From Macrostomum lignano (taxonomy: Eukaryota): DNA of 64,000 nucleotides. The stretch spans positions 744,001 to 808,000 of the forward strand of contig NIVC01000176.1 in assembly GCA_002269645.1 (NCBI GenBank), read 5' to 3'. The notes beneath the pieces were generated by a model. The model saw nothing but the letters and a program-made list of their open reading frames with translations. It was not told the origin of the DNA and ran no database searches. Below are positions 28,828 to 61,000 of the stretch, piece by piece. The position numbers and the translations under genes are program-made. Numbering within the stretch: position 1 is the stretch's first letter; every line of letters begins with the position of its first letter.

Positions 28828-28886
28828 TCTTTCTTTCTTCAGTCCTTTCTACCGTTACCGTGTCAGTGCCTGAGATTGGAGTTGCC

Positions 28887-28979
<93 letters not shown>

Positions 28980-29007
28980 GTCTCTCTCTCTCCCCTCTCT
29001 CTCTCTC
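28430..29007. repeat. Compound tandem repeat: a fixed unit of about 60 bp interleaved with variable-length (TC)n tracts, 5-6 copies
   Basis: GTGCCTGAGATTGGAGGTGCCCTCC(TC)nTTTCTTCAGTCCTTTCTACCGTTACCGTGT repeated. Confidence 0.9.
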
Positions 29008-30851
29008 CGTGCCAAAAGGTTTCAGTGCGGAACAAATCCAAAGACAGACGCAGGAATTCAAGCCGCGCTGAGCGCCATCAAGACAGGAAACTGGAACACA
29101 CACGACTCGGTACAACGCGCACTAAAAGCCATCAGCAGCGAACTGACAGAAGACAATGGAATGCTACTTCGAGGAGACCTCATTGTCGTCCCAGAGTCAC
29201 TACGGAGACCAATTTTGCAACTGGCCCACACCGGACATCTTGGTGCCGATCGAACACTCAAGCGTCTGCAGACCAAAGTCTGGTGGCCAGGGATGCGCAG
29301 TGACTGTGGTACCTTCGTGAAATGCTGCATTCCTTGTCAAGCGTCGGACACTCTTACCAATCAGACACCTCTGAGACCGACAAAGTTACCCGAGGGTCCC
29401 TGGCAGCAACTTGGAATGGACTTCTTCGGACCTGTCCAAGGCCAAATGCTTCTAGTTACCACGGACCTGTATTCTAAATACCCGGAGATCAACATTTTGA
29501 GCTCGACAACAGCAGAGAGTGTAAAACCGCATCTGAGGAGACTTTTCAGCAGGCACGGCGTTCCAGTCGAAGTCGTGACAGACAACGGACCTCCTTTCAG
29601 TTCGGCCGATTTTCGTAGCTTTCTAGCCGACTTCGGAGTCCATCATCGCCTCATCTGCCCGCTGCATCCGGAGTCCAATGGGGCAACCGAGCGCCTCAAT
29701 CGAAGCATCGGCAAAGCAGTGAAAACCGCAGTTTCTGAAGGTCGCAATTGGAGAGAAGCCATCGAAGACTGGCTGCTGGCTTTCCGCACGACACCACACA
29801 GGGCTACCGGACGCACCCCTGCAGAGCTTCTAATGGGCAGAAAAATCAACGACGGAATCCCGACTAGCAAACCGTTCGTTCCAACAGCCGGTGAGGTCCA
29901 CGACACTGTTAGAGCCTGGAATCGCAAGTATGCCGACAGCATGAAGCAGCAATTTGACACGCGCAACGCAGTGAAGGATCACAGCATCCAACCCGGCAAC
30001 CAAGTGCTCCGCAAACAACAGACGCTAAACAAACTGCAACTGCCTTTCGAGCCTCTGCCATGGACGGTAAAGGAAGTTCGAGGAGACACCTGCATCTTAG
30101 AGCGAGGGCGACAGTCCTGCATGCGCCATGTAACGCATCTGCGACCTATCAGCCAACCTGCCTCTGCCGGCCAGCCTGCCTCAGCCGGCCAACCTGCCTC
30201 AGCCGGCCAACCTGCCTCAGCCGGCCAGCTTGCCTCAGCCGGCCAACCTGCCTCAGCCGGCCAGCCTGTGTCTGCCGGCCAACCTGCCTCGGCCGGCCAG
30301 CCTGTGTCTGCCGGCCAGCCTGTGTCTGCCGGCCAACCTGCCTCAGCCGGCCAGCCTGTGTCTGCCGGCCAACCTGCCTCGGCCGGCCAGCCTGTGTCTG
30401 CCGGCCAGCCCGCCGGCCAGAGGGACTTCCTAGCCTTCAGGAGGCATCCACGTGAGGCTAAAGAGGGGCCGAAAATTTATAAATGACAAGCGCTGTTTGA
30501 ATCACAAACTGAACTGACAACAACAATATTATTTTTATTCCCGTCAACTGATTTACTGACAATAATAATATTTTTTATTTCCGTCAGCTGTTTTTTTTTA
30601 TTCCTCATCACTTTTTCCTTAGGGGGGAAGAATTGTAGGCTTGCGCCTTAGCAGTTCTCAGTGTCGTATTTACTAGCCTCTTTCTATCTCTCTGTCATTC
30701 TATATCGGCGTACATTCAACTCTCTAACCATGCACGCGCCAACCCCCCATTGACTAATATTTAAATACACGCATTGGCATTTACTCGTATTTGGGACTTT
30801 GCTATCGGTATCGATCCAAACAAACTCACACGGCTTGTCAGAGTTCCTACA
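29008..30851 (+). mobile_element. 5'-truncated Ty3/Gypsy LTR retrotransposon: integrase ORF ending at 30486, PPT 30621-30632, 3' LTR 30634-30851
   Basis: H2C2 motif (AHTGHLG...CIPC). DDE residues in MDFFGP, VTDNGPPF and SNGATER. The PPT AGGGGGGAAGAA is followed by an LTR bounded by TGTAGG...CCTACA inverted ends. An 18-bp (SAGQPA/V) repeat lies in the integrase tail. Confidence 0.88.
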
Positions 30852-37100: not shown

Positions 37101-40100
37101 CACCACCCCATTTTCTCCACTTCGAACCCACCACCCCATTTTCTCCACTCCAGACCCACCAACCCATTTTCTCCACTCAGAACCCACCACCCCATTTTCT
37201 CCACTCCAGACCCACCACCCCATTTTCTCCACTCAGAACCCACCACCCCATTTTCTCCACTCAGAACCCAACACCACATTTTATCCACTCAAGACCCACC
37301 ACCCCATTTTCTCCGCTCCAGAACCACCACCCATTTTGTCCGACAGCCACTGTTACTTACTCGTACAATCCAGTGTGCTGCGGCAGCAGCGGCTGTCGTC
37401 CACCCTGCTGACTCATCCGGCCTCCTTTGTCCAAGCGACTGTCAACTAAGAGCACATCGGGCAGCTGCTGCAGTTGAGACTTGAATGTAAGAAAGGGAAG
37501 AAGTACTGCAAATTTTATCTTTTTACTTTAAAATTCACACCTATCTACTATTAGTATTCTAGTTAATAAGAATTCACCAGACACTGGAAATTAAAACTCA
37601 AATTCACTCAGACTCATTTACAGACTGGTCACACCTCAGAGCTCACCTGTCTCCCAGTGTCAGTGCTGCTACTTCCGCTATCAGTTCTGATGTCGCTCCG
37701 TCTACTGTGATTGGCTGATCGATTTGTCCTCACTGATGCCGTGATTGGCCGGGTTTTGAGTTCCTCGGTGACGCTGCCGCTGTCGGGCGCTCCTTCGGCG
37801 CCACGGCTGCCACCTGCGCTGCCACCGCCGCTGCCGCTGCCGCTGCTGCTGCCGCTGCTGTCGCTGCGCTGTTGCTGCTCTTCGCTGAGCACCGTCAGCG
37901 GCGGCTGATGCTGCTGACCGAGCGGCTGCTGCTGCAGCTGCTGTAGATTCTGCGATGAGGCTTCGAGACTGTCCGAAGTCAGCGTCGTCCGAGTGGCATC
38001 CCGGCCAGGTGCGTGATGGCGGTCTGGATGGGTAGGGACAGTGCCTATAGATCTAGTGTGTGATCTATAGAATCTAGTGTGTGATCTATAGAATCTAGTG
38101 GGTGATCTATAGAATCTAGTGTGTGATCTATTGAATCTAGTGTATGATCTATTGAATCTAGTGTGTGATCTATTGAATCTAGTGTATGATCTATAAAATT
38201 TAGTGTGTGATCTATTGAATCTAGTGTATGATATATAGAATTTAGTGTGTGATCTATTGAATCTAGTGTGTGATCTATAGAATCTAGTGTGTGATCTATA
38301 GAATCTAGTGTGTGATCTATAGAATCTAGTGTGTGATCTATAGAATCTAGTGTGTGATCTATAGAATCTAGTGTGTGATCTATAGAATTTAGTGTGTGAT
38401 CTATTGAATCTAGTGTGTGATCTATAGAATCTAGTGTGTGATCTATAGAATCTAGTGTGTGATCTATAGAATCTAGTGTGTGATCTATAGAATCTAGTGG
38501 GTGATCTATAGAATCTAGTGTGTGATCTATTGAATCTAGTGTATGATCTATTGAATCTAGTGTGTGATCTATTGAATCTAGTGTATGATCTATAAAATTT
38601 AGTGTGTGATCTATTGAATCTAGTGTGTGATCTATAGAATCTAGTGTGTGATCTATAGAATCTAGTGTGTGATCTATAGAATCTAGTGTATGATCTATTG
38701 AATCTAGTGTGTGATCTATAGAATCTAGTGTGTGATCTATAGAATCTAGTGTGTGATCTATAGAATTTAGTGTGTGATCTATTGAATCTAGTGTGTGATC
38801 TATAGAATCTAGTGTGTGATCTATTGAATCTAGTGTGTGATCTATAGAATCTAGTGTGTGATCTATAGAATCTATTGAGTGATCTATAGAATCTAGTGTG
38901 TGATCTATAGAATCTAGTGTATGATCTATAGATCTAATGTGTGGTCTATAGAATCTAGTGTGTAATATAGAATCTAGTGTGATCTATAAAATTTAGTGTG
39001 TGATCTATTGAATCTAGTGTGTGATTTATAGAATCTAGTGTGTGATCTATAGAATCTATTGTGTGATCTATAGAATCTAGTGTGTGGTCTATAGAATCTA
39101 GTGTGTGATCTATAGAATCTAGTGTGTGGTCTATAGAATCTAGTGTGTGATATATAGAACCCAGTTTGTAATCCATAGAATCTAGTTTTTGATCTATAGA
39201 ATCGATCGCTTTTAATCTGTAGAAACTGGGCTCTATCAAGGTTTTCTAATTTACAGTCAGTCTACAGAATCTGTCACTCCAATCTACAGAGTCTGTCACC
39301 CCGATCTACAGAATCTGTCACCTCAATCTACAGAATCTGTCACCCTAATCTACAGAATCTGTCACCCCAATCTACAGAATCTGTCACCCTCAATCTACAG
39401 AATCTGTCACCCTCAATCTACAGAATCTGTCACCCTAATCTACAGAATCTGTCACCCCAATCTACAGAATCTGTCACCCTCAATCTACAGAATCTGTCAC
39501 CCTCAATCTACAGAATCTGTCACCCCAATCTACAGAACCTGTCACCCTAATCTACAGAACCTGTCACCCTAATCTACAGAATCTGTCACCCCAATCTACA
39601 GAATCTGTCACCCCAATCTACAGAACCTGTCACTCTAATCTACAGAACCTGTCACCCAAATCTACAGAACCTGTCACCCAAATCTACAGAATCTGTCACT
39701 CTAATTTACAGAACCTGTCACTCTAATCTACAGAACCTGTCACCCCAATCTACAGAACCTGTCACCCCAATCTACAGAACCTGTCACCCCAATCTACAGA
39801 ATCTGTCACCCCAATCTACAGAATCTGTCACCCTAATCTACAGAATCTGTCACCCTAATCTACAGAACCTGTCACCCCAATCTACAGAACCTGTCACTTT
39901 AATCTACAGAACCTGTCACTCTAATCTACAGAACCTGTCACCCAAATCTACAGAATCGGTCACTCTAATTTACAGAACCTGTCACTCTAATCTACAGAAC
40001 CTGTCACCCCAATCTGCAGAATCTGTCACCCCAATCCACAGAACCTGCAGCTCAGTCTCACCCCAAGCGGTCAGGCTGGTGACCTCGCTGCTCCCCAGCC

Positions 40101-43100
40101 CCGAGTCCGCAAAACTGGCCGCTCTAGCGGGTCTCTTCGCTCGCGCAGCCTCCTTGACAGAAGATGCAGCTGATGAGGTCCTTTCCTGCTCCGTCTCAAC
40201 TTTTTCCTCCGCAGCCTCCTTCTCAGCTTCATCCGGGTTTTGAGGCAGGTTTTTCAACCGAACCATCAGGTCGCTTTCGAACAGCTGCACCACCGGCTCG
40301 TCCCGTGCCAGCAGCGCCTCCTCATCCTGTCTGACCATCCCGGAAGATTCTCGAGAGGCCAAAGCCAGGGCGGAGTCGGCGGCGGCTGCAGAGGACTTCT
40401 CAGCTTCAGCCTTCGCCGCTTCGGCAGCTGCGGCGGTGGCGGCAGCGGCAGCGGCGGCCGCGGCGGCCTCTTGAAGGCGGACATCGAGTTCTTGACGAAC
40501 GGTGTTCCACCTCTGAATTGGGGAAGGAGTGGGATTGGAATTGAATTAGCAATCCCATGTGAGATAGATTAGCAATCCCATGTGAGATAGATTAGCAATC
40601 CATGTGAGATAGATTAGCAGTCCATGTGAGATAGATTAGCAATCCCATGTGAGATAGATTAGCAATCCCATGTGAGATAGATTAGCAATCCCATGTGAGA
40701 TAGATTAGCAATCCCATGTGAAATAGATTAGCTATTCACTCTGTTCCCACGTTCACCTCTTTCAGTCTGGCGATATCCTTGTAGCCCAGGAACTCCAGCA
40801 GATCAACGGTTTGATCTCCTTTGATGAGCATCAGCTTGAGTCGCTGCTCAGACAGAACGCCAGCTTCCTCGCTCTGTTCGAATATGGTTGCCATGTGACT
40901 GATGAGCTGGTCCTCCACGGATTTGTGTAGTTCTGGCTCGAGATCTAGTTGCCTGCGATTTGAAGCCGGGGTAGACGGAGAGTTAAGTTGAGTAGACATA
41001 GACACTGAGTTGGTGGAAATGAGAATTGAGTAGAGTGGTGAGTAGAGTGGTGAGTAGAGTGGTGAGTAGAGTGGTGAGTTGATTAGGGAGTAGAGTGGTG
41101 AGTAGAGTGTTGAGTAGAGTGGTGAGTTGATTAGGGAGTAGAGTGGTGAGTAGAGTGGTCAGTAGAGTGGTGAGTAGAGTGGTGAGTTGATTAGGGAGTA
41201 GAGTGGTGAGTAGAGTGTTGAGTAGAGTGGTGAGTTGATTAGGGAGTAGAGTGGTGAGTAGAGTGGTCAGTAGAGTGGTGAGTAGAGTGGTGAGTAGAGT
41301 GGTAAGTAGAGTGGTGAATAGAGTAGTGAGTAGAATGGTGAGTAGAGTGGTGAGTAGAGTGGTGAGTAGAGTGGTGAGTAGAGTGGTGAGTAGAGTGGTG
41401 AGTAGAGTGGTGAGTAGAGTGGTGAGTAGAGTGGTGAGTAGAGTGGTGAGTAGAGTGGTGAGTAGAGTGGTTAGAAGAGTGGTTAGTAGAGTGGTGAGTA
41501 GAGTGGTTAGAAGAGTGGTGAGTAGAGTGGTGAGTAGAGTGCTGAGTAGAGTGATGAGTAGAGTGGTGAGAACAATCACTCACCTCTTAATATCCCGCAC
41601 TCTGTCGCACATGGCCAGGTGATCCCAGCCGCTAACTGTAAACTTCATCAACGTGAGCAGGCCCCTAGTAACTGGTTCTTTCTCCGCTGGTGGTACCTCA
41701 GCCATTGTAAACCAGGGCTCGGCCAGGATCTGCTCCAGCAAAGAGTCGGCAGTTGTCGACACTACATTAGCAGCAGGTTTTGTTCCGTCATCGCCGAACT
41801 GAACACGGCGAGTCCGTTCAGCTGACGACCTTCCGCCTGTTTGCGGCTCTGTCTGCCGCGTCAGCGGCTGCACCTCAGGCAGCGGCGGCGGCTGCTGCGT
41901 CTGTCGATCGGCTGCCGATCCGGCAGATGTCGGCGTCTTGAGTATCGACTGCGGCGGTGGCGGCTGTTGCGGATGCGGCTGCTGAGGCTCAGGTGGCTGA
42001 GCCGCCTGATTGGCTGGCTCTTCTTTTGGCTGAGAGTTGCAGAAGAGTTTTTATAGATGTAGATGGGATAAACGTCTAATTAGATGACGTGAAAGAGCAC
42101 TAGATTACTTAAAAGCACACTAGATAAGCTAAAAGTACACTAGATAAGATAAAAAGTGCACTAGATGAGATAAAAGTACACTAGATGAGATAAAGTACAC
42201 TCGATAAGATAAAGGTACACTAGATACGATAAAAGTGCACTAGACGAGTAAGAAGTACACTAGATGAGATTAACGTACACTAGATAAGATAAAAGTACAC
42301 TAGATAAGATAAAAGTCCACTAGATAAGATAAAAGTACACTAGATAAGATAAAAGTACACTAGATGAGATAAAAGTACACTAGATAAGATAAAAGTCCGC
42401 TAAATGAGATAAAAGTACACTAGATAAGATAAAAGTCCGCTAAATGAGATAAAAGTACACTAGATAAGATAAAAGTCCGCTAAATGAGATAAAGTATACT
42501 AGATGACAAAGTCAGATAAAGTTAATATGGTAAGTGGGGATAAAATCCTAAGAAATCCCTAAAAACCGAACACTCACCTCGGACACCTGAGTCTGTCCCG
42601 ACTTGCCCTTCCCAGTTCCGGGCATCGTCAGTTTCTTCGTCTTCTTAACGATCGGCTTCCTGGCCTTCTTTTTCGCCACTTTCTGTTGCTCCTGCGGCGG
42701 CTGCTCCTCCTTTGGCGTCTCCGTCGATGGCAGCTCCGTCGTCACCGGCGTCGCTTCGCGCGTAGTCGCAGCCGGGGTCGCCGACTTGACGACCGGATCC
42801 TCTGTGTCGGGACTGACGGCGGCGGTGGTGACCTCCTCCGGTGGCGCCGCCGGCACTGGAGCGCTAATTGGCGGCAGGGTGCGCAAGTTGATCTGCCGCT
42901 GCTGTCGCGGCTCCTTCGGCGGCGTCGGCGCCTCCTCGGCTCGGCTGGGCGCCTGCGATTGCTGCTGCGACGCTCGGCTGCCGGCCGCCGCCGCCGCCTC
43001 GGCCGCCGCCTTCTGCTGCATCTCCTCGAGCATCTGGCGCCGCTTCTCCAGGGCGGTCTCGAGGTCGGCGAGGCTCGCGCCGTTCAGCCAGTCGCGCTCG

Positions 43101-44313
43101 GCCTCGGCCAGCTGCTGCTGACGGGCGCGCTCGGCCGTGTCAGCGCTGTTCAGCGAGCGGCGCCGGCGAGGTGCGTCCTGGGTAGGGGATTGGGGATGTG
43201 AAGATGTGTGGATTCCAGGAATAGGTGAATGATTCTTCAAGTGGGTCAAGGAATCTTGGAATAGGTCAATAATTCTTCGATTGGGTCAAGGATTCTTGTA
43301 ATGAGTCAAGGATTCTTCAAGTAAGTCAAGTATTCCTTGAATGGGTCAAGAATTTTTTTATTTGGTCATGGATTCGTCAAGTGGGTCAAAGATTCTTGGA
43401 ATGGGCCAACTTTAAAGATCATCAAGACATATTCTAAGTTATTTTGGACTCAAGTGTTATACTTCTGTCCCGTTTGAGAGGCATGAAAGATAAATAGAAA
43501 GTATTCGAAAAAAGTTATAAACAGTATCAAACTCACGCCGAATTGCGTCATCAGATCGCCTGCCTTGGGTTCGTACAGATCTCGGATTACGGAGTTGGGA
43601 ATTTCACCTGGTTTTATGATAGAAATTGGCTGTTTGAATTGGTTCCTCTGTATAGTGAACTAAATAGATATTGATCGATAAAGAGTGAGATAGAGATCGG
43701 TAGAGAGGGAGATAGAGATCGGTAGAGAGGGAGATAGATATCGGTAGAGAGGGAGACAGAGATCGGTAGAGAGGGAGACAGAGATCGGTAGAGAGGGATA
43801 TAGAGATCGGTAGAGAGGGAGATAGAGATCGGTAGAGAGGGAGACAGAGATCGGTAGAGAGGGAGATAGATATCGGTAGAGAGGGAGACAGAGATCGGTA
43901 GAGAGGGAGATAGATATCGGTAGAGAGGGAGACAGAGATCGGTAGAGAGGGAGATAGATATCGGTAGAGAGGGATATAGAGATCGGTAGAGAGGGAGACA
44001 GAGATCGGTAGAGAGGGAGATAGATATCGGTAGAGAGAGACAGAGACCTGCAGAGAAGTGACACAAATCTGCAGTGATCCTCAAGCAGCTCACAGTCAGG
44101 CGCCACCGGGTAGCGACTCCGTGGCGCCGCCCGCGGCCGTCCCGCCCGCAGGTCCCAGGCCAGGTCCAGCTGGCAGGCTCGCGCCAGTTCGACTTTCCGG
44201 CCGGGCGGGTAGCCGAGGGTGGCCGCGGCAGGCCAGACCGGAACTGCAGGTGCCGGAGAAGCCGAAGGCGAGGGCGAAGCCGCTGCAGAGCTCTTCTGAG
44301 TTGCGGAAGCCAT
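34132..44313 (-). CDS. Uncharacterised low-complexity (A/P/Q/S/E-rich) protein, about 1000 aa. Exons 44313-44094, 43607-43537, 43177-42578, 42029-41584, 40952-40757, 40512-40062, 38023-37647, 37467-37361 and 34693-34170. The last exon either reads through to TGA at 34132 or splices to an unlocated terminal exon.
   Basis: All eight introns have GT-AG ends, and their phases (1,0,0,2,0,1,0,2) join into a single open frame starting MASATQKSS. Exons are GC-rich. No domain recognised. Confidence 0.78.
34831..36075. repeat. 12-bp intronic minisatellite (GATAGACAGGTA)n
   Basis: Seen directly. Confidence 0.95.
36865..37335. repeat. 28-bp intronic minisatellite (CCACCACCCCATTTTCTCCACTCCAGAC)n
   Basis: Seen directly. 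Confidence 0.92.
38055..39175. repeat. 21-bp intronic minisatellite (TCTATAGAATCTAGTGTGTGA)n
   Basis: Seen directly. Confidence 0.95.
39265..40050. repeat. 22-bp intronic minisatellite (AATCTACAGAATCTGTCACCCC)n abutting the exon donor
   Basis: Seen directly. Confidence 0.95.
40545..40735. repeat. 23-bp intronic minisatellite (GATTAGCAATCCCATGTGAGATA)n
   Basis: Seen directly. Confidence 0.92.
41025..41570. repeat. 12-bp intronic minisatellite (GAGTAGAGTGGT)n
   Basis: Seen directly. Confidence 0.95.
42095..42505. repeat. 20-bp intronic minisatellite (ACTAGATAAGATAAAAGTAC)n
   Basis: Seen directly. Confidence 0.92.
43685..44045. repeat. 22-bp intronic minisatellite (GAGATCGGTAGAGAGGGAGATA)n
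   Basis: Seen directly. Confidence 0.93.
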
Positions 44314-45660: not shown

Positions 45661-45986
45661 TAGGAGCGATTAATGAACTTTAAGGAGAATAAAACTCAAT
45701 GACTCAAAACTGTGTTTCGAGAAAATTAAAGATTTTTTGTACTGCAATCAGCAATTTGATTTAAATATATTTGGTTTCAGGAAAGTCAGCTGACAGCAAT
45801 TAATTTCTATCCATACTGGCATTCTACTGGAAACAGGAAAATTTAATATTTGATCGCATTTATTAATATTTGCACCGACAAGCCTAATGGTTAATTAAGT
45901 ATTGTGATTCGAAAAAACGTAACAAAAGTTTCGAGCTCTTAAAAAATGTGAAAAAAGTCTGATTGTCCAAAAGTGCGCCGCAGGCG

Positions 45987-46211
45987 TCAGCACTGATTGT
46001 CCAGGTAGTAAATGGTGACGGAGCCGTCAATGCTGGCCTCATTGCCACCGGTGACGCTTGAGCACGAGTTGCTCAGAGCCATGGTGGCGTTGCAGAACGA
46101 GCCGCCTCCGCCCCCGGCCTGCAGCGAAGAATTTTAATGCCATTGCCAATAACTCTACTGTTAGTAGTGTGCTAATCTGTGCCTTCAATATTAATACGAC
46201 TGATACTACAA

Positions 46212-46281
<70 letters not shown>

Positions 46282-46344
46282 ATGATAATAATACTACTAC
46301 TAGTACTACTACTACTACTACTACTAATGATAATAATACTACTA

Positions 46345-46422
<78 letters not shown>

Positions 46423-49400
46423 TTACTACCACTACTACTACTGCTACTAACATTAATAATAATACTACTACTAGTACTACTACTAATACTACTACTACTA
46501 CTCACCTGCTTGTCGTGGGTGCCGGCGCCGCCGCCGCTGTAGCCGCCGCCGCCGCCGCTGGCGCCGTTGTCTTCGCTGCCGCCGCCGCCACCGCCAAAGC
46601 CACCAACGGCGCCAGGATTCATTCCGCCGGGTTCGCCGCCAACGAACGGCTCCCTGGTGCCGGACAGTGGACCGCCGTGTCCGGCGCCGCCGTGCTCGGG
46701 TCCGGCGCGCCTGGCGCCACCGCTGAGCCAGCCGGCGCCGCAGCCGCCGTGGTAGCTGGCGGCCTCCGTGTTGGTCCAGCCGGCGCTACCGTTGAAGCCG
46801 CCCCGGCCAGTCTGGCCGAGATTCGGTCCGGACGAGTCGGTGCCGTTCGTGCCGGCCTGTCCGGGGACGCCGGTAAGGGTGTAGCTGGCGCCGCCGCCGC
46901 CGCCAGCGGCCAGGTAGAGGACCAGCGAGCGCGGGTTGTAGACAAAACTGCCGCCGCCACCGCCCGTGCCAGCATTGTCTTCGATCTGGATTTTCAAGGG
47001 TACAGTCCAATGTCACATCTCTGGAATTCTCTATGGTCTTTTCCTAGGGATTTTCCAAAATCGTGTTTCAGGATAGGGAGTTTCCATTGTCGTGACCCAG
47101 GGATTTACCAAGTTCACATTTCAGGAATTTCCCATTGTCGTGTCACAGGGATTTGCCAAGGTCATATTCCAGGAATTTTCCAGTGTCGTGTCCCAGGGAT
47201 TTGCCAAGGTCATATTCCAGGAATTTTCCAGTGTCGTGTCCCAGGGATTTGCCAAGGTCATATTCCACGAATTTTCCAGTGTCGTATCCCAGGGATTTGC
47301 CAAGGTCATATTCCAGGAATTTTCTACGGTCTCTTTCTAGGGAGTTTCCTAGGGATGCTAGCAATAGGCGTTGCTAGTTTGGTTTTAGGAGTTACGATCC
47401 TTTGTGTTTGTGATGTTTCGGGTTTATGATTTCGGGAGTTGTCTCTTCTAGGGTTTGTGATGAAACCCTCCCCCCGCCCTTACGTGAGGAAAGAGGCGAG
47501 AGCCAATCAGAAGGCAGCGAGGGGGAGAGAAGAATAACAAGACTGAACCAGACAGAGAGGGAGAGAAATAAGAATAACAGGACTGAACCAGACAGAGAGG
47601 GAGAGAGATAAGAATAACAAGACTGAACCAGACAGAGAGGGAGAGAGATAAGAATAACAAGACTGAACCAGACAGAGAGGGAGAGAGATAAGAATAACAG
47701 GACTGAACCAGACAGAGAGGGAGAGAGATAAGAATAACAAGACTGAACCAGACAGAGAGGGAGAGAGATAAGAATAACAAGACTGAACCAGACAGAGAGG
47801 GAGAGAGAACAGAGTAAACAGAGGCCAATAGCAGATGAACTGAAGAAAGTCGCTGAAAAAAGTACTTTTCAAATCCAAAAGTAAAGAAAATCTAGAAAGA
47901 AAGCATTACCGACGGCCGACGAGAAGGCGAAACTTCGCTAGAATTGCCTCCATGTTGGCCGACAACAATGGCCAGCATCTGGCCGCGCTCCAGGCGGAAT
48001 TTGCCTCGCGCCGAGGCGCCCCGTCCACCGAGCCAGGTGCCGCCGCCCGAGTTTCCGTAGCTGGTCGAGTGGTTGCCACCCGCCGCGCCTGCGGCCGAGA
48101 TTTCAAAGCAGCCAGTTTTTGGCACAAAATATCTGATGATGCTCCCTGTGGCGCCCTGGCCTGTGGCGTCGAATCGAACATCTAAAAAATGCCGGCGCTT
48201 TCTTATCATACTACTTTCCCGCCATAGGTCTTCAGTAGCATAATCAGCGCTTTTTTATCTCACTCACATCTTGGCGCAGTGCAGAAATAATCCACCTCAA
48301 TGCGCATCATACCGCCGCTGAAGGAGAAACACTCGTCTGGGATAATGTCCTGGGATCGAATCGCATTCTGGAGGAACGGGTCCATCAGCCAGGTCGTGTC
48401 CAGCTGGCAGCCTTCTTCTGTCTTCTTGCAGCTGCGGTTGTTTCCGGTTGAGGTGTCGGGAACTGCGTCCTTGACCCATCTGATCACTGACCCCTGTCAG
48501 ATCCCTGAGGCATCTGATCACTGACCCTGTACTGACCCCTATCAGATCCTTGACCTGTCTGATCACTGAACCCTATCAGATCCTTGACCCATCTGATCAC
48601 TGACCCCTATCAGATCCTTGACCCATCTGATCACTGACTCCTATCAGATCCTTGACCCATCTGATCACTGACCCCTATCAGATCCTTGACTCATCTGATC
48701 ACTGACCCCTATCAGATCCTTGACTCATCTGATCACTGACCCCTATCAGATCCTCCGATCCTTGACCCCCTTATGACCCCTCCGATCCTTGACCCCCTAA
48801 TGACCCCTTCGATCCTTGACTCCCTTATGACCCCTCCGATCCTTGACCCCCTTATGACCCCTCCGATCCTTGACCTTTTCTATACTTGGCCCCTTCATAT
48901 TCTTGACCCCCTCGTATTCTTAACCCCTCCTATACTTGACCCCCTCCGATCCTTGACCCCCTCCGATCCTTGACCCCCTCCGATCCTTGACCCCCTCCGA
49001 TCCTTGACCCCCTCTGATCCTTGACCCCCTCCGATCCTTGACCCCCGATCCTTGACCCCCGATCCTTGACCTTTCCTATACTTGACCCCTTCCTATTCCT
49101 GACCCCCCTTCGATCCTTGACCCCTGACCCACCTTTGATTATCGGCCCCCTCGGATTCTTGACCCCCTCTGACCCCTCCGACCCGAGCGACTCACTTGCG
49201 CCGAACCCTAGCAAGCGCGGTATGCGAGGTGCAGTTGTAGATGCTGCATCCGGCATCCTCCGCCACCATCGCGGCCACAGCCGAGCTGCTGCGTCCCCGA
49301 GTGAGGTTCTCAAGCTTAACTGAGCACTTCAGCTTTGAGTAGCGCACCTGCAGGATGCCCATGGTTGAGCGCTCGCCGCAGACCAGCGGCGACTCCCGCC

Positions 49401-52400
49401 GGCCGTCAGTGTCGAACATGACCACAGTGTGAAGGGTCGAGTTGCCTGCGAAAGGTTGATGGAGTGAAATTTATTCTGTCACTCGCATGTCACTCCCTTT
49501 GCTAGAACTCCCACTGTCACTCCCATGCATTCTTTCTTTCTCCAATTCTGCCATTCTGATTCTGTCACTGCCATTCTGTCACTCCTATTCTGTCACTTTC
49601 ATTCTGTCACTCCCAGTTTGTCACTCCCATTCTGTCACTTTCATTTTGTCACTCCAATTCTGTCACTCCAATTATGTCACTCCAATTCTGTCACTCCAAT
49701 TCTGTCACTTCCATTCCGTCACTCCGGAACTCACCGCGGAAGCTGACGCACACCTCGCTAGAGTATTTCTGCCCGTTGAGCACGTTCATCCCCTTGCAGC
49801 AGATGGGGTAGTAGAGATTCACGTGGGTCAGGCTCAGGCTCTGTCCTTTGGTCGCAACCAACTGACTGGTCTGGATAATCCGCCAGGAATAGGTGACCTC
49901 CGGCATGCCCACATCCGCCTGGCAACTGAGGGTGTCCGATTTGTCGATGCTGCTGTCGTTGGTAACGACTCGACCTGTGGCCGCATTGATTATACTGACT
50001 CGCCTGAGACCGGCTTTGTAGGCCACCTGGGTGGGGATTGAGAATTTTATTGCTTTGGGGAAATTTTGAAAGTACTGGATTCTTATAAAGATTTTAGAAA
50101 GTATCAGGAGACTACTGTAAGTGTCAGGATTCTACATTAGGTGTCAGGAGACTACAGTAGATGTCTGGAGACTAAAGTAGATGTCAGGAGACTGCAGTAG
50201 ATGTCAGGAGACTACAGTAGATGTCAGGAGACTACAGTAGATGTCTGGAGACTACTGTAAGTGTCAGGATTCTACATTAGGTGTCAGGAGACTGCAGTAG
50301 ATGTCAGGAGACTACAGTAGATGTCAGGAGACTACAGTAGATGTCAGGAGACTACAGTAGATGTCAGGAGACTACAGTAGATGTCAGGAGACTACAGTAG
50401 ATGTCAGGAGACTACAGTAGATGTCAGGAGACTACAGTAGATGTCAGGAGACTACAGTTTCAGGAGGTTACAGTGTCAGGATTCTACAGTGTCAGGATTC
50501 TACAGGGAGTGTCAGGATTCTACAGTAAGTGTCAGGAGACTACAGTAGATGTCAGGAGACTACAGTTTCAGGAGGTTACAGTGTCAGGATTCTACAGTGT
50601 CAGGATTCTACAGGGAGTGTCAGGATTCTACAGTAAGTGTCAGGAGACTACAGTAGATGTCAGGAGACTACAGTTTCAGGAGGTTACAGTGTCAGGATTC
50701 TACAGTGTCAGGATTCTACAGGGAGTGTCAGGATTCTACAGTAAGTGTCAGGAGACTACAGTAGATGTCAGGATTCTACAGTGAATGTCAGGATTCTACA
50801 GTGAATGTCAGGATTCTACAGGGAGTGTCAGGATTCTACAGTAAGTGTCAGAAGTCTACACAGGTCCCCAGAAGACACAGGGATTTCAGGGATGTCAGGG
50901 ATATCAGTGATGTCAGGAGATGTCAGGGGGTGTCAGGAATGTCAGGGGATGTCAGGGGTTGTCAGGAATGTCAGGGATGTCAGGGATGTCAGGAATGTCA
51001 GGGATGTCAGGGATGTCAGGGATGTCAGGAATGTCAGGGATGTCAGGGATGTCAGGTATGTCAGGGATGCTAATGACACACCTTCAACCGTTGGGTCGCG
51101 GTCTCCAAAGTGAGCGGATCGTCAGCCCGGCACTCGAACGAGTCGGTGGCATTGTTCGCGTCGGGCTGGTAGGCCAGGTTCTGCCGGACAGTCAGGCTGC
51201 TGCCGTCGGCGCTCCAGTCGAATTCGAAGTCGGTGGGCAGCGAGGGCACTGCGGCACCGTTGCGGAACAGAGTCAGCTGGGCCTGCTGGGGCGCGCTGGG
51301 CAACACGACCACCTGGCACGAGACGGTGTTGGCCTGCGACTTTAAAGGCGCGTCGCTGGCAGATTTCAGCTCGAGGGAAGCCTGCCGGGGTTCGAATTTT
51401 GTAGGATTTGTTTAAATGGGGTGCGTATATGACTTTTTGTTTATCTGCTTTGCTTTTACCTAATCAGGGGTCTATTAAATTTCCAAAGAAATTAACAATA
51501 CTTTACAGTCGTCTGCAGTAGCAAGCATCAATCTACAATAGTAAAAATCAGACTACAGAAAACTACAGTAAGCTACAGCATACTACAGTAAGTTACAGCA
51601 TACTACAGTAAGCTACAGCATACTACAGTAGGCTACAGCATACTACAGTAAGTTACAGCATACTACAGTAAGCTACAGCATACTACAGTAAGCTACAGCA
51701 TACTACAGTAGGCTACAGCATAACTACAGTAAGCTACAGCATAACTACAGTAAGCTACAGCATAACTACAGTAAGCTACAGCATACTACAGTAAGCTACA
51801 GAATAATACAGTAAGCTACAGCATAACTACAGTAAACTACAGCATAACTACAGTAAGCTACAGCATAACTACAGTAGGCTACAGAATAATACAGTAAGCT
51901 AGAGCATACTACAGTAGGCTACAGCATAACTACAGTAAGCTACAGCATAACTACAGTAAGCTACAGCAAAACTACAGTAGGCTACAGCATAACTACAGTA
52001 AGCTACAGCATAACTACAGTAAGCTACAGCATACTACAGTAGGCTACAGCATAACTACAGTAAGCTACAGCATAACTACAGTAGGCTACAGCATAACTAC
52101 AGTAAGCTACAGCATAACTACAGTAAGCTACAGCATAACTACAGTAAGCTACAGCATAACTACAGTAAGCTACAGCATAACTACAGTAAGCTACAGCATA
52201 ACTACAGTAGGCTACAGCATAACTACAGTAAGCTACAGCATAACTACAGTAAGCTACAGCATAACTACAGTAGGCTACAGCATAACTACAGTAAGCTACA
52301 GCATAACTACAGTAAGCTACAGCATAACTACAGTAAGCTACAGCATAACTACAGTAGGCTACAGCATAACTACAGTAAGCTACAGCATACTACAGTAAGC

Positions 52401-54395
52401 TACAGCATACTACAGTAAGCTACAGCATAACTACAGTAAGCTACAGAATAATACAGTAAGCTAGAGCATACTACAGTAGGCTACAGCATAACTACAGTAA
52501 GCTACAGCATAACTACAGTAAGCTACAGCAAAACTACAGTAGGCTACAGCATAACTACAGTAAGCTACAGCATAACTACAGTAAGCTACAGCATAACTAC
52601 AGTAAGCTACAGCATAACTACAGTAAGCTACAGCATAACTACAGTAAGCTACAGCATACTACAGTAAGCTACAGCATAACTACAGTAAGCTACAGCATAA
52701 CTACAGTAGGCTACAGCATAACTACAGTAAGCTACAGCATAACTACAGTAAGCTACAGCATAACTACAGTAGGCTACAGCATAACTACAGTAAGCTACAG
52801 CATAACTACAGTAAGCTACAGCATAACTACAGTAAGCTACAGCATAACTACAGTAAGCTACAGCATACTACAGTAAGCTACAGCATACTACAGTAAGCTA
52901 CAGCATACTACAGTAAGCTACAGCATAACTACAGTAAGCTACAGAATAATACAGTAAGCTAGAGCATACTACAGTAGGCTACAGCATAACTACAGTAAAC
53001 TACAGCATAACTACAGTAAGCTACAGCAAAACTACAGTAGGCTACAGCATAACTACAGTAAGCTACAGCATAACTACAGTAAGCTACAGCATAACTACAG
53101 TAAGCTACAGCATACTACAGTAAGCTACAGCATACTACAGTAAGCTACAGCATACTACAGTAAGCTACAGCATAACTACAGTAAGCTACAGAATAATACA
53201 GTAAGCTAGAGCATACTACAGTAGGCTACAGCATAACTACAGTAAACTACAGCATAACTACAGTAAGCTACAGCAAAACTACAGTAGGCTACAGCATAAC
53301 TACAGTAAGCTACAGCATAACTACAGTAAGCTACAGCATAACTACAGTAGGCTACAGCATAACTACAGTAAGCTACAGCATACTACAGTAAGCTACAGCA
53401 TACTACAGTAAGCTACAGCATACTACAGTAAGCTACAGCATAACTACAGTAAGCTACAGAATAATACAGTAAGCTAGAGCATACTACAGTAGGCTACAGC
53501 ATAACTACAGTAAGCTACAGCATACTACAGTAAGCTACAGCAAAACTACAGTAGGCTACAGCATAACTACAGTAAGCTACAGCATAACTACAGTAAGCTA
53601 CAGCATAACTACATTAGGCTACAGCATAACTACAGTAAGCTACAGCATAACTACAGTAAGCTACAGCATAACTACAGTAAGCTACAGCATAACTACAGTA
53701 AGCTACAGCATAACTACAGTAAGCTACAGCATAACTACAGTAAGCTACAGCATAACTACAGTAAGCTACAGCATAACTACAGTAAGCTACAGCATACTAC
53801 AGTAAGCTACAGCATACTACAGTAAGCTACAGCATACTACAGTAAGCTACAGGAAAGCCGGAAGCCTCACATTAAGCGCTTGACTAGGAGAATAGTTTGA
53901 GTCCAGCCAGGCCTCATTGCTCATCAGCTTGGCTCTGGGATCAATGATCAGCACATTCCACTCGGTGATTGACAGGTTCCTAGCCGCATAGGCGTAGTTC
54001 ACTGAGCAGGCTAGAACGATTTGAGCCTCGGTGCCGGCGGCCGGCAGCAGGCGGACGACTCGGCCACGGATGCTGGCCAGCGGTGATGAGGCGTTGCTAG
54101 GCTGCAGCACGGCAACTGAGTAGCTCACGGAGCGGGCGCCGCGCCACCTGGAGCGGCCGCTGCGGAACGAGCAAACGAAAGCTGCCGAATCGGGCTTCGG
54201 GTTGTCATAGTAACCGAACAGTCTCCGACCTTCGGTTGTGTAGAAAGCCACGGCTGGTGAATGGGGAACGATTCGTTGGGAGAGATTCGCCGAGCGGGTC
54301 GCGGCGACGGCTAGGGCGACAGATTCTTCTGCTCCTAGAAGAGCAGCGAACAGAAACGCCAGCAAGACGGCGAAGCAACGATAGCGCTGCTGCAT
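45987..54395 (-). CDS. Secreted protein, 820 aa: signal peptide, 2-3 Ig-like domains, SUEL/rhamnose-lectin-like Cys module, ALK/LTK-type glycine-rich domain. Exons 54395-53871, 51381-51082, 50026-49735, 49445-49196, 48479-48268, 48181-47910, 46985-46506 and 46118-45987.
   Basis: Intron phases 0,0,1,2,1,0,0 join into one ORF from MQQRYRCFAVLLAFLFAALLGA to GGNEASIDGSVTIYYLDNQC*. Ig-type Cys pairs (SCQVVV...FECRAD; LSCQAD..YSWR..ICCKG). GRD motifs SAAGAAGG, GGRGASARGKFRLERGQMLAIVVGQHGG, GGGGGSFV, LAAGGGGGA and GGFGGGGGG...GGGGGYSGG. No TM or kinase before the stop. Confidence 0.82.
46205..46500. repeat. (ACT)n/(AAT)n trinucleotide tract filling the last intron
   Basis: Seen directly; ends at the CTCAC donor at 46501-46505. 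Confidence 0.95.
47090..47330. repeat. 48-bp intronic minisatellite
   Basis: CCAGGGATTTGCCAAGGTCATATTCCAGGAATTTTCCAGTGTCGTGTC units. Confidence 0.9.
47520..47810. repeat. 40-bp intronic minisatellite
   Basis: AAGAATAACAAGACTGAACCAGACAGAGAGGGAGAGAGAT units. Confidence 0.92.
48470..49180. repeat. 34-bp repeat (48470-48750) containing copies of the adjacent splice acceptor, followed by a C-rich repeat of about 19 bp
   Basis: The minus-strand unit contains GATCAG|ATGGGTCAAGGA, the same as the exon start at 48479. Confidence 0.9.
50100..51065. repeat. Intronic 20-bp repeat (ATGTCAGGAGACTACAGTAG)n with higher-order blocks, then (GTCAGGGAT)n
   Basis: Seen directly. Confidence 0.92.
51545..53850. 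repeat. 20/21-bp minisatellite (CTACAGTAAGCTACAGCATA[A])n, about 2.3 kb, filling intron 1
   Basis: Seen directly; variant blocks recur. Confidence 0.97.
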
Positions 54396-58081: not shown

Positions 58082-61000
58082 TGAGACACGGGCAGGGGTG
58101 GAGCCGTGCGTGGACAGAGCTGAACGGCATGGTCAGCTGCAGGAATAGGATGATAGAGAGGCGCGGATAGGAGGGACAGAGAGCAGTGTGCAGGGGTAGG
58201 CAGCCACGCTGGCAGGGAACAGAGGCGCGTGTAGCCAGTTGCAGCCCGGGACAGAGAAGTGTGAAGGGGGCCTGGGACAGAGTTCCGAGCAAGGCACAGA
58301 GAGGTAGGGTCCGGTAGCCATGTATAGACAGGGACCCACGCGAGGGCAGGACAGGGGAGTAGACATGCAAGTTGCATGCAAGGCCAGAGAGGTGTGCGCG
58401 GAGGGTGACAGAGAGCAGTGTGTAGGGGTAGGTAACAGCAAACTTTAGTAGAGGTGCGTGCGGGGACGGAGAAACCAGTCTGAGCGTACAGAGACGTTAC
58501 AGAGAGGTACACAAACAGAGAACAAAGCGAGCAGAGCACATGTGTAGGCGCAGAGACGTGAGGGAGAATCGACCAAAACACGCTATGTATTATCAAAAGT
58601 TGGTTTTAGTGCAGCATATTTAATAGTGGGTAGTATAATAGTATGTACATAGTAGGTATAATGGTAGTAATAATAGTAAGTATATTAGCCCAAAAGGTAG
58701 GCTAAAACAGGCTAAACTGTGTGTACGCATCCTCATCACCCCACAAGCCCCCTCTCCCGCCAGATTCACTCTTCCAAACCCTCCTGTATTGCTGTATGAA
58801 GGAAAATATAGTGTAAAAATACAGATGTTAACCGTCAGACCGCTGAAATCAGGGCACACTAGAGGGGGTTTCGGGTCTGCATGCTCTATGTAAGCTGCTT
58901 GAGGAGGTTCCAAGGGCGTTGTGAGGGTTTCCATTATGTTTTGAAAAAACTAGGGGCTTAAATACAACGTTTTATTCAAAAAGTAGGTTATTTTAATGAA
59001 ATAGCTGACACAATCATTGTCGAGAGTAGAAATTTTTATAAGAAACCAGGCATTTTAGCAAAAATAAACCTTCAAACCACATAAAATTGAATAAAAAGCA
59101 GACATTTTCAATTATAAACCGCAAGTATTTTAATAGAAAAGTAAGCAAACAAGGCACAAAAGCAGCAAATTTTACCTTTTTTATTTTAATGTTACTGTTA
59201 AGGTAGAGAGTAGAAACTTGTGAGCTGTACGGAGTTAGAAAGTATTAACCATTATGTATCGTATGAATTATTAGTTCAGTACCAGCCATTGGTCAAGCGA
59301 GCATTTATGAAGTTATTACGAGTGATGAAGGGATAGAGAGCTATATACAGGAAGACAGTATCCTTCTAAACCACCACGAACAGATTGCTAATACAGATAA
59401 GCTTTGTCTGTGTGCAGTATGAGTAAGCGAAGGCGGGGCAAATACTTTTCCACATGCCGGACAGAACAGTATTGTGCTAGGATTTCTCTCGAAATCGCGG
59501 TACGTTACTAGTTTTTATCACACCATCCAGATGCGTCAACTAGTCAGCAGTAGTCATTTATATGTTATTAGAACTTACAAACCCAGGTCAGGTAAATATT
59601 ACAAAGAGTATATTACGTACACACGCCAACTCCGAATACCAAGCCATACTAGTCTACTTGCAGTGCTCCTGGAGGGAAGGGACGGTCAAGAGTTACACAC
59701 CAAGAATGCATTCACACAAAGAGTACACCACTCGAGCCCCGTCCATGCGCCCCGATATGTATGACGCAGGCAACCCTCCCGACATGTATGCCGCAGGCGA
59801 CCCTCCCGACATGTACCCAACATGTATGTCGCAGGCGACCCTACTCACATGTACCCCGACATGTACACCCTACCAAATGGCACTCGAGCCACAGGTGCCA
59901 AGCGGCCCCCGAAATGTACGCCGCGGGCGCCCCCCCCCTCCCGAGCCGAAGGTACACTCTTCCAATATGAGTGTACACTCTCCCAATACAAGTGTACACT
60001 CTCCCAATATGAGTGTACACTCTCCCGATATGAGTGTACATCGATTTGTAGTCAACAATACCTATTAACACAAAATTAGGCTAGTGAAAACTACTTATAG
60101 TAGGTGAAATTGCGTATATTTACGTAAAAAGTAAGCAAAACACATATTAATCACATCAGTAGGTGTAAATATCAGGGCATAATACATATTACGAAACATA
60201 TAGGTGTACGGACATATAGAATTAAGCATATGGACAGCAAAAACACACAATGTAGGTGCATTTTATCGATATTTTGGCAGAAAAGTAGGTGAAATAGACA
60301 AAATAGTAGGTATAATACACAGAACCTACTCATTAGTGTAGTAGGCGCTTGTAGATGCTAGTATATTGTAAAACATAGGTTGAAATACACATACGCACAG
60401 TAGATACAAGTATAATGCAGGTGCATATGCACACACTGTAGATTCGAATTATGTAGATGCATAGGCTAAAATACACACATCGTAGAGACAGAAGCAGGCA
60501 TAATGCAGGAAAATTATGATACATATTAGTGCGTAAAGTATCATATTATGACACGCTGTAGCACATATTGACATAATGCAGGGGAAAATATTGACAGAAA
60601 TAGTACACAATTGTAGAGGTAACAACCCGCCAACTAGTAAGGGCATCCAGCACTTGTTCAGGTTTTTATTATTTCGAGACGAGTGTCATGCCCCCGCAAG
60701 AGATCTTGTGTTTGTGTTTGTGTGTGTGTGTGTGTGTGTTTGTTTGTGTACATTGTGTACATTTGCGTACATGTGGTCCTATATACCGGAAATTGCGTAC
60801 ATTTATGCGTACAATTATGTCTATGCGCTACATTGTGTGTAGTTCGTTGCCCTGCGTTTGTAAATACAGTTTAGTCCGTGCACTGCATTGATGCCTACTT
60901 TTGTGTTAGGTACCTGCTTTTTATTAAATACACTGCACCAAAAGCAACTTTAATCGGTACATACTGTGTTTTTGTAGAGGTGCCGGTATGCTTTTTAATA

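What the first reader, a model, noticed from the sequence alone, without database searches (positions are those of the whole stretch)
45987..54395. Secreted Ig + lectin-like + ALK/LTK glycine-rich-domain protein with no membrane anchor or kinase
Seen in sequence: 8 exons give a complete 820-aa ORF with a signal peptide, Ig-like folds, a Cys module resembling SUEL/rhamnose-binding lectin (LVCGERSTMGILQVRYS...NCTSHTALARVR...C...DEC...RIEVDYFC) and a full ALK/LTK-type GRD ending in the usual GxNxxxxGxVxI strand followed by a stop. Established: the GRD (TNF-like strands plus polyglycine helices) is the ligand-binding and dimerisation part of the ALK/LTK receptor kinases. Inference: a soluble decoy, ligand trap or pattern-recognition/adhesion molecule with an architecture I do not recognise. 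The lectin call is tentative.
Basis: partly seen in the sequence, partly recalled or inferred. Interest (0 to 1): 0.7.

Follow-up and report, generated by a model that had tools for sequence, protein, structure and literature searches.

The report
Secreted flatworm protein with ALK-type glycine-rich domain
This is an intact Macrostomum lignano (flatworm) gene for a secreted protein whose C-terminal third has the glycine-rich fold best known from the ALK/LTK receptors. It belongs to a large, uncharacterised family of kinase-less proteins with that fold and is not a cut-down ALK, and the proposed lectin module could not be confirmed.

Summary
The 8-exon minus-strand gene at 45987-54395 is real. 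I reproduced the 820-aa ORF. The public Macrostomum lignano homeologue (BOX15_Mlig022246g1, 804 aa) is 98.8% identical and uses a different exon-5 acceptor.

Exons 6-8 (aa ~511-804) encode a genuine TNF-like/glycine-rich (GRD) domain:
- Pfam alone is below threshold.
- A 31-sequence family profile hits LTK and ALK structures at E about 1e-26.
- The AlphaFold model (pLDDT ~90+) gives ALK/LTK/SCD-2 GRDs as its top 21 PDB Foldseek hits.

There is an N-terminal signal-like segment, no other hydrophobic segment, AATAAA about 125 nt after the stop, and no kinase-like sequence anywhere in the 64 kb.

The GRD is not ALK-derived. It clusters with cnidarian secreted GRD proteins (55-60% identity against 34% to ALK/LTK). 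It sits in a family of at least 835 cluster representatives from bacteria, viruses, choanoflagellates, cnidarians and other M. lignano genes, whose partner domains are adhesion modules and never kinases.

The N-terminal 500 aa have no relatives outside M. lignano. Ig-like calls are weak, and the SUEL-lectin call has no sequence-search support (fold untestable).

Most likely it is an extracellular binding or adhesion protein. An ALK decoy is unlikely.

The parts
53871..54395 (-). Exon 1 (aa 1-175): start codon at 54395, signal-like peptide (aa 1-21/31), first Cys-containing domain (C75...C130), 5 N-glycosylation sequons
   Evidence: Donor |gtgagg. 98.1% nt identity to the homeologue exon.
51082..51381 (-). 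Exon 2 (aa 176-275): Ig-like domain (C197...F214-RNG...C259)
   Evidence: Pfam C1-set E=4.9e-4, 20.8 bits, just under the cut-off of 21. CD22 Ig d6-d7 E=0.03.
49735..50026 (-). Exon 3 (aa 276-372): second Ig-like domain (C310...W323...C351/352)
   Evidence: Pfam Ig_2 E=0.064. Motif read from the sequence.
49196..49445 (-). Exon 4 (aa 373-455): first half of the orphan 8-Cys module
   Evidence: No Pfam or PDB match. Conserved only in M. lignano copies.
48268..48479 (-). Exon 5: second half of the 8-Cys module.
   Evidence: Both are in-frame AG acceptors. P0001 maps from 48436 down.
47910..48181 (-). Exon 6 (aa 511-601): start of the GRD, holding the TNF-like beta-strands and the first glycine motifs (ISAAGAAGG, IVVGQHGG)
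   Evidence: Best single-sequence match to human ALK GRD, E=0.0022. pLDDT >90.
46506..46985 (-). Exon 7 (aa 602-761): glycine-rich core ([36 protein letters not shown])
   Evidence: Invariant and near-invariant Gly columns. 99.8% identical to the homeologue.
45987..46118 (-). Exon 8 (aa 762-804): last GRD strands (GGGGGSFC...C..TGGN.....G.V.I) and stop codon TGA at 45989-45987
45859..45864 (-). AATAAA poly(A) signal about 125 nt after the stop
   Evidence: Read from the sequence.
51553..53852 (.). Intron 1 minisatellite (21-bp unit x 111). The other introns also hold minisatellites.
   Evidence: TRF. The array is much larger in the homeologous contig NIVC01000355.1.

Best explanation
A functional M. 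lignano gene encodes a secreted, heavily N-glycosylated, disulfide-rich modular protein of about 800 aa. Its order is signal peptide, an Ig-like/orphan N-terminal half, an orphan 8-Cys module, and a C-terminal TNF-like/glycine-rich (TG/GRD) domain. The GRD belongs to an ancient family of kinase-less extracellular or surface proteins found in bacteria, phages, giant viruses, choanoflagellates, cnidarians and flatworms. ALK/LTK carry only a divergent branch of this family.

Inferred mechanism: the rigid polyglycine-helix lattice on a TNF-like sandwich acts as a stable binding platform, as it does for cytokines in ALK and for host-surface receptors in phage tail-fibre tips. The N-terminal modules act as spacers or co-binding modules. 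The protein would therefore work as an extracellular binding, adhesion or recognition molecule, not as a signalling receptor or an ALK decoy.

Shown: gene structure, secretion features, GRD homology and fold, family membership, purifying selection. Inferred: the binding/adhesion role and its target.
For: - Gene model and identity.
- Purifying selection between the two genomic copies: 20 synonymous against 10 non-synonymous differences, dN/dS about 0.16, exons 98-99.8% identical against introns ~91-95%.
- Secretion: only one hydrophobic segment, at the N-terminus; 15 N-glycosylation sequons; 22 Cys.
- GRD: PDB profile hits at 1e-26, AF2 pLDDT ~90+, Foldseek PDB top 21 all ALK/LTK/SCD-2 GRDs.
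- Viral GRD-like proteins, including phage tail-fibre and giant-virus proteins, match down to E=1e-17.
- Family breadth and partner domains (EGF, PAN/Apple, WSC, C-lectin, LamG, cadherin, T9SS tail; no kinase).
- The window GRD clusters with Nematostella, Pocillopora and Sanderia secreted GRDs at 55-60% identity. ALK/LTK are most distant at 34%.
- Literature: phage Pam3 gp24 TNF-like + glycine-rich domains recognise the host receptor and resemble SCD-2 GRD 7LIR (PMC9608196). The ALK kinase family is placed as arising in Bilateria (PMC8662651), whereas the GRD is older.
Against: - No expression, localisation or binding data were found. Mlig022246 is absent from the searched papers and supplements.
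- The N-terminal 500 aa could not be modelled (pLDDT 28), so their role is a guess.
- No kinase-less eukaryotic GRD protein was found functionally characterised in the papers searched, so the analogy rests on ALK and phage adhesins only.
- The signal peptide was judged by hydropathy, not by SignalP.
Confidence: 0.6

Rival explanations
1. Soluble decoy or ligand trap of the ALK pathway. A secreted GRD would sequester the flatworm's ALK ligand (Jeb/HEN-1/ALKAL-like).
For: The fold is that of the ALK/LTK ligand-binding domain. The protein is secreted and lacks a kinase.
Against: - The GRD is the most distant from ALK/LTK of all those compared and nests with cnidarian kinase-less GRDs.
- Single-sequence similarity to ALK is marginal (E=0.002).
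- No ALK-type MAM, LDLa or EGF modules are present.
- GRDs occur widely in organisms without ALK, including bacteria, choanoflagellates and cnidarians.
- None of the eight M. lignano GRD proteins looked up (P0011, P0022, P0024, P0031, P0069, P0075, P0091 and this gene) showed a kinase domain where Pfam was run, or a credible kinase name.
Confidence: 0.07
2. Bulk structural or secretory material, such as a component of mucus, rhabdites, adhesive, eggshell or seminal fluid. The glycine-rich domain would serve mechanics rather than specific recognition.
For: - Secreted, glycosylated and Cys-rich.
- The N-terminus is lineage-restricted, as is typical of secretory-product genes.
- Relatives are annotated 'loricrin-like'.
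Against: - The GRD is a compact globular fold predicted with high confidence, not a low-complexity fibre.
- dN/dS of 0.16 indicates ordinary constraint.
- The gene was not found in the adhesion or reproduction gene lists searched.
Confidence: 0.2
3. Incomplete model of a receptor kinase, with TM and kinase exons lying outside the window or reached by alternative splicing.
For: Old UniProt models of this locus are named 'Protein kinase domain-containing protein' (P0004, P0007).
Against: - Those models are frameshifted fusions with the downstream gene. P0007 has no Pfam kinase hit, and neither sequence shows a recognisable kinase domain when read.
- An in-frame stop is followed by AATAAA.
- There is no kinase-like sequence in the 64 kb.
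- The next gene downstream starts at about 44313 in the same orientation.
- The NCBI model ends at the same stop.
Confidence: 0.03

Closest known systems
Cnidarian secreted GRD proteins annotated 'loricrin(-like)' (Nematostella XP_048576998, EGF+GRD; Pocillopora verrucosa XP_058944677, two GRDs in a cluster named Apple-domain-containing; Sanderia EGF x6 + C-lectin + GRD)
   Same: Closest GRD sequences (55-60% identity; domain scores ~205-215 bits). They have no kinase, and an adhesion-type module lies N-terminal to a C-terminal GRD that ends the protein.
   Different: The partner domains are EGF, C-lectin or an Apple/PAN annotation there. Here they are Ig-like domains plus an orphan 8-Cys module with no relatives outside M. 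lignano. None of the cnidarian proteins has a known function.
ALK/LTK/SCD-2 ligand-binding TG (TNF-like + glycine-rich) domain (PDB 7NX0, 7N00, 7LRZ, 7LIR)
   Same: Same fold and homologous sequence over the whole domain. The glycine motifs and terminal strand are shared.
   Different: - Only ~34% identity in conserved columns, on the most distant branch.
- No following EGF-like domain, TM helix or kinase, and no MAM or LDLa.
- ALK has a long insert after VGQQGED that is short here (alignment).
- The known ligands (ALKALs) are reported from vertebrates (my knowledge).
Other M. lignano GRD proteins (PAN + 2 GRD, P0011; WSC + GRD, P0022; UniProt-named Apple-domain GRD proteins, P0075 and BOX15_Mlig028980g1/P0091)
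   Same: Same species, a GRD alongside a different N-terminal module, and no kinase.
   Different: Their GRDs are only 44-47% identical to this one and form separate branches. Their N-terminal modules differ.
Phage tail-fibre tip adhesins with polyglycine-rich domains (Pam3 gp24, S16 gp38) and the Bxb1 tail tip
   Same: A TNF-like and/or polyglycine-II lattice is used as a receptor-binding tip (PMC9608196). Foldseek hits: Bxb1 tail tip E=0.01; viral glycine-rich proteins down to E=1e-17.
   Different: These are trimeric fibre context and much shorter domains. Similarity is mostly structural, and homology to the window protein was not established here.

Membership tests
ALK/LTK receptor tyrosine kinase family | Extracellular TNF-like/glycine-rich (TG/GRD) domain | tested here: met
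   Profile against PDB at 1e-26. Foldseek top 21 hits.
ALK/LTK receptor tyrosine kinase family | Membrane-proximal EGF-like domain and transmembrane helix after the GRD | tested here: not met
   The protein ends 7 aa after the last GRD strand. There is no hydrophobic segment beyond the N-terminus.
ALK/LTK receptor tyrosine kinase family | Cytoplasmic tyrosine kinase domain | tested here: not met
No Pfam kinase hit. A stop plus AATAAA follows the GRD.
ALK/LTK receptor tyrosine kinase family | GRD orthologous to ALK (closest relatives are ALK GRDs) | tested here: not met
   NJ tree and identities: cnidarian GRDs 55-60%, ALK/LTK 34% and on the most distant branch; the ALK+LTK split has 100% bootstrap. 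The tree is a simple distance tree with only two ALK-family sequences.
Pfam PF12810 ALK_LTK_GRD (domain family, kinase-independent) | Score above Pfam's gathering threshold | tested here: not met
   15.2 bits against 24.5. Close relatives do pass: 37 of 82 at E<=1e-4.
Pfam PF12810 ALK_LTK_GRD (domain family, kinase-independent) | Homology to solved GRDs over the full domain, with the conserved glycine motifs | tested here: met
   hmmsearch of a 31-sequence profile that includes the window protein: LTK profile positions 11-276 of 282, E=1e-26. Invariant Gly columns.
Pfam PF12810 ALK_LTK_GRD (domain family, kinase-independent) | TNF-like beta-sandwich plus polyglycine lattice fold | tested here: met
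   The AF2 model has pLDDT ~90+ for aa 510-804. Foldseek TM (target-normalised) reaches 0.68 to the ALK/LTK TG domain. Polyglycine-II geometry was not measured directly.
SUEL / rhamnose-binding lectin (PF02140) | Match to the family HMM or to a solved RBL domain | tested here: not met
   No PF02140 hit at E<=10 on the isolated module. No PDB chain at E<=10.
SUEL / rhamnose-binding lectin (PF02140) | YGR, DPC and KYL motifs and the 8-Cys pattern (motifs recalled from my own knowledge) | tested here: not met
   The sequence has YSK, DEC and MRI at the candidate positions. It has 8 Cys in 112 aa, but with spacings 18-26-5-13-7-26-16, unlike the RBL spacing I recall.
SUEL / rhamnose-binding lectin (PF02140) | RBL alpha/beta fold | tested here: inconclusive
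   AF2 mean pLDDT is 28 for the N-terminal half, so no fold search was justified.
Immunoglobulin superfamily | Ig-domain HMM match, or a Cys...Trp...Cys core at the expected spacing | tested here: inconclusive
   C1-set 20.8 bits against cut-off 21; Ig_2 13.9 against 27. CD22 Ig E=0.03. C197...C259 has F214 in place of the core Trp; C310-W323-C351. The structure model is unusable.
Secreted (non-anchored) protein | Cleavable signal peptide, no TM helix, no GPI signal | tested here: met
   By hydropathy and n/h/c-region inspection only. SignalP, DeepTMHMM and NetGPI were not available.

The most novel reading that the evidence does not exclude
The protein is an animal-encoded soluble recognition molecule that uses the GRD the way phage tail fibres do, binding microbial or foreign cell-surface structures. 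That would make it a new class of innate pattern-recognition or adhesion receptor, shared in kind with the cnidarian 'loricrin-like' GRD proteins. It would also represent the ancestral, pre-ALK use of the domain from which the ALK ligand-binding region was later recruited.
Probability: 0.12. Interest if true: 0.7.

Novelty: new variant of a known kind. Interest (0 to 1): 0.4.

Why it matters
The GRD is usually described as the ALK/LTK-specific ligand-binding domain. This locus and its relatives show that animals also keep it in secreted, kinase-less proteins fused to adhesion modules. The flatworm copy is closest to cnidarian ones. That points to an old metazoan family of unknown function which predates ALK and could show what the domain bound before it became a cytokine receptor.

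Two practical points follow:
- Automatic names mislead. GRD-only proteins are labelled 'receptor protein-tyrosine kinase', 'Protein kinase domain-containing' or 'loricrin-like'.
- M. lignano is genetically tractable (RNAi, transgenesis), so the function is testable.

The gene itself is already deposited as a hypothetical protein, and nothing here shows an unusual mechanism.

Tried and rejected
1. Pfam on the whole protein and on four sub-regions gave only sub-threshold hits.
2. I asked whether the 8-Cys module is a degenerate TNF-like half of a GRD. It starts VMFDTDG like the GRD's VRFDATG and ends CFSFSGG..IEVDYFC like CSSVTGGN..VTIYY. HMMs of the GRD N-part, C-part and N+C core scored the module below shuffled controls, so I rejected this.
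3. SUEL/RBL lectin: no HMM or PDB hit. I ran no further search on building an RBL profile.
4. AF2 of the N-terminal 495 aa with the only available alignment (M. lignano copies) gave mean pLDDT 28. It is unusable, so I ran no fold search on it.
5. Homologues of the N-terminal half: only copies of the same gene were found. In the first word-index search glycine words apparently swamped the candidates (4 hits), so I used the exhaustive search.
6. Expression data: Mlig022246 was not found in full texts or in the supplements of four M. lignano papers.
7. Kinase exons: none in the window. The 'kinase' names of P0004, P0007, P0010, P0011 and P0016 are automatic. P0011 is a chimeric model fused to IFT140.
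8. The literature searches found no paper on kinase-less metazoan GRD proteins. They found only a note on three fungal PF12810 proteins of unknown function.

Full report
**Source and gene model**

The window is Macrostomum lignano DNA. The spliced protein is 98.8% identical (10 differences in 804 aa) to NCBI BOX15_Mlig022246g1 (P0001). The window is collinear with contig NIVC01000355.1 at about 91-95% identity outside the exons, so it is a homeologue, allele or another assembly of that locus.

There are eight minus-strand exons: 54395-53871, 51381-51082, 50026-49735, 49445-49196, 48479-48268, 48181-47910, 46985-46506 and 46118-45987. Together they give exactly 820 aa. The public protein maps onto the same exons but uses the in-frame acceptor 48431 for exon 5, which gives 804 aa. 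A donor at 47934 is another in-frame alternative (812 aa).

The introns are packed with minisatellites. Intron 1 holds a 21-bp unit repeated 111 times, and that array is many kilobases longer in the other copy.

The two copies differ at 30 of 2415 coding positions, 20 synonymous and 10 non-synonymous. That gives dN/dS of about 0.16, with exons 98-99.8% identical. The gene is therefore under purifying selection and is not a chance ORF.

**Secretion and absence of anchor or kinase**

- The only hydrophobic 19-residue windows are at the N-terminus. That end reads MQQRYR, then CFAVLLAFLFAALLG, then an AVA|A site.
- The C-terminus (IYYLDNQC) is polar.
- There are 15 N-x-S/T sequons and 22 Cys.
- The stop TGA at 45989-45987 is followed by AATAAA at 45864-45859.
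- A different gene without any Pfam domain starts at about 44313 on the same strand.
- Older UniProt models of this locus (P0003, P0004, P0007) are frameshifted and read through into the downstream gene. Two of them are named 'Protein kinase domain-containing', but P0007 has no Pfam kinase hit and neither sequence shows a recognisable kinase domain.

**The C-terminal domain is a true GRD**

- Pfam on the protein alone is below threshold: ALK_LTK_GRD E=0.021, 15.2 bits against 24.5.
- phmmer against PDB puts human ALK GRD first, but only at E=0.002.
- The exhaustive search of 1.8 billion cluster representatives found 835 proteins at E<=1e-3 and 130 at E<=1e-10. Every hit among the 150 best listed that is not a copy of this gene aligns only to aa ~490-804.
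- A profile built from the window protein plus 30 of these domains hits LTK (7NX0, E=1e-26), ALK (7N00, 4.6e-26) and C. elegans SCD-2 (7LIR, 2e-15) across the whole domain.
- With that alignment, AlphaFold2 models aa 510-804 at pLDDT mostly 90-98.
- The 21 best Foldseek PDB matches are all ALK, LTK or SCD-2 TG/GRD structures. E runs from 7e-12 to 1e-7, probability is 1.00 and target-normalised TM reaches 0.68. The next hit is a mycobacteriophage tail tip at E=0.01.
- The GRD coincides exactly with exons 6-8.

**It is not an ALK derivative**

The relatives whose sources I could look up include the following:
- Nematostella 'loricrin' (EGF + GRD)
- Pocillopora 'loricrin-like' (two GRDs; its cluster carries the UniProt name 'Apple domain-containing')
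- the jellyfish Sanderia (six EGF + C-type lectin + GRD)
- Monosiga and Didymoeca proteins of about 2200 aa with four or five GRDs plus EGF
- bacterial surface proteins (DUF285 + GRD; CHU_C/T9SS-sorted; a Candidatus Kentron 'glycine rich protein')
- an intron-less three-GRD gene on a metagenome contig
- at least seven other M. lignano GRD genes, including PAN + 2 GRD and WSC + GRD by Pfam, and two that UniProt names Apple-domain proteins

A Pfam census of 82 relatives lists ALK_LTK_GRD in 37. The partner domains are the T9SS sorting tail, EGF types, LamG, Ig_7, SprB, C-lectin, HYR, cadherin and NHL. No kinase appears among the 25 most frequent of the 46 families found.

UniProt names such as 'receptor protein-tyrosine kinase' on these proteins appear to be automatic, since no kinase domain is detectable. 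P0011 is in addition a chimera with IFT140.

In a distance tree of 25 GRDs the window domain groups with the cnidarian proteins and the metagenomic three-GRD protein at 55-60% identity. The other M. lignano GRDs are at 41-47%. Human ALK and LTK are the most distant at 34%, on a long branch of their own. This is a simple NJ tree, and the ALK and LTK sequences were taken from the tool alignments and my memory.

A kinome study places the ALK kinase family as arising in Bilateria (PMC8662651), so the GRD is older than ALK. GRD-like folds also occur in giant-virus and phage proteins. The phage Pam3 tail-fibre tip uses TNF-like plus glycine-rich domains for host recognition and resembles SCD-2 GRD (PMC9608196).

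**The N-terminal half**

Residues 22-505 have no relative outside copies of the same M. lignano gene, in either the exhaustive or the word-index search.

Ig-like assignments are weak:
- C1-set 20.8 bits (cut-off 21) for exon 2
- Ig_2 E=0.064 for exon 3
- CD22 Ig domains E=0.03
- plausible Cys...(F/W)...Cys cores
- UniProt's automatic 'Ig-like domain-containing' name

It lacks the YGR and KYL motifs as I recall them. Only the Cys count and a 'DxC...YxC' tail are reminiscent.

My own alternative, that the module is a degenerate TNF-like half-GRD, failed a shuffle-controlled HMM test. Both structure predictions leave this half at pLDDT below 50, so its folds remain untested.

**Interpretation**

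What is shown:
- a constrained gene for a secreted, glycosylated, multi-domain protein;
- a C-terminal domain that is a bona fide TG/GRD of the kinase-less, cnidarian-like subfamily.

What is inferred: the GRD is a rigid binding platform, as in ALK and in phage adhesins, and the protein acts outside the cell in binding, adhesion or recognition. I give this about 0.6.

Rivals:
- A bulk structural or secretory-material role is the main rival (0.2).
- An ALK-ligand decoy is unlikely (0.07) because of the phylogenetic placement and the wide occurrence of GRDs without ALK.
- A truncated RTK model is very unlikely (0.03).

No expression or functional data for Mlig022246 were found. The literature searches found nothing on kinase-less metazoan GRD proteins, only a note on three fungal PF12810 proteins of unknown function.

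**Verdict**

The GRD, secretion and absence of a kinase are confirmed, the Ig calls are weak, and the lectin call has no sequence-search support.

The architecture is a lineage-specific variant within a large, database-visible but uncharacterised class, and the gene is already deposited as a hypothetical protein. Interest is moderate (0.4). It offers a tractable entry point into what the GRD does outside ALK, but nothing here shows a new mechanism.

Noticed in passing
window 58084-60707 and 61375-64000: A perfect (100%) inverted repeat of at least 2.6 kb per arm with a 667-bp spacer, running to the end of the window (three collinear blocks). It is either a very recent palindromic duplication or a fold-back artefact of long-read assembly. 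No convincing genes lie inside it.
   Followed up: partly
window 28759-30486 (+): A 575-aa ORF with Integrase_H2C2 and rve domains, a fragment of an LTR-retrotransposon pol. Its C-terminus runs into a (PASAGQ)n repeat.
   Followed up: partly
window 51553-53852; L001 ~10540-24560: The intron-1 21-bp minisatellite has 111 copies here. In the homeologous contig NIVC01000355.1 it is expanded to well over 10 kb, stretching that gene to 20 kb. Nearly every intron of the gene carries its own minisatellite.
   Followed up: partly
window 46212-46502: An (ACT)n trinucleotide array of 97 copies starts just 4 nt after the exon-7 donor site (intron begins at 46505). The exon-7 reading frame stays open through it as poly-Ser/Ile. 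A gene caller could easily read through the donor at 46506.
   Followed up: no
window ~39980-44313 (-): The downstream same-strand gene (start MASATQKSS... at 44313; further ORF blocks at 43249-42548, 41873-41580, 41005-40736 and 40362-39982) has no Pfam domain. Older UniProt models (P0003, P0007) fuse it to the GRD gene through frameshifts.
   Followed up: partly
related proteins P0010, P0011, P0016, P0172, P0004, P0007: GRD-only proteins carry automatic names such as 'receptor protein-tyrosine kinase' or 'Protein kinase domain-containing protein' without a detectable kinase domain. They come from Monosiga, Desmophyllum, Candidatus Kentron and M. lignano. Cnidarian GRD proteins are named 'loricrin(-like)'. 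This looks like systematic misannotation.
   Followed up: partly
window 48431 vs 48479 and 47910 vs 47934: There are in-frame alternative splice sites. The shorter exon-6 form removes VSPSRRPS from a GRD loop.
   Followed up: no
L002 (ENA ERZ25878582 contig, 575 kb), 3001-5535: An intron-less 844-aa protein consists of almost three tandem GRDs. It is the closest non-cnidarian relative of the window GRD, at 46% BLAST identity (55% in the conserved columns of the tree alignment). The source organism is unknown.
   Followed up: no
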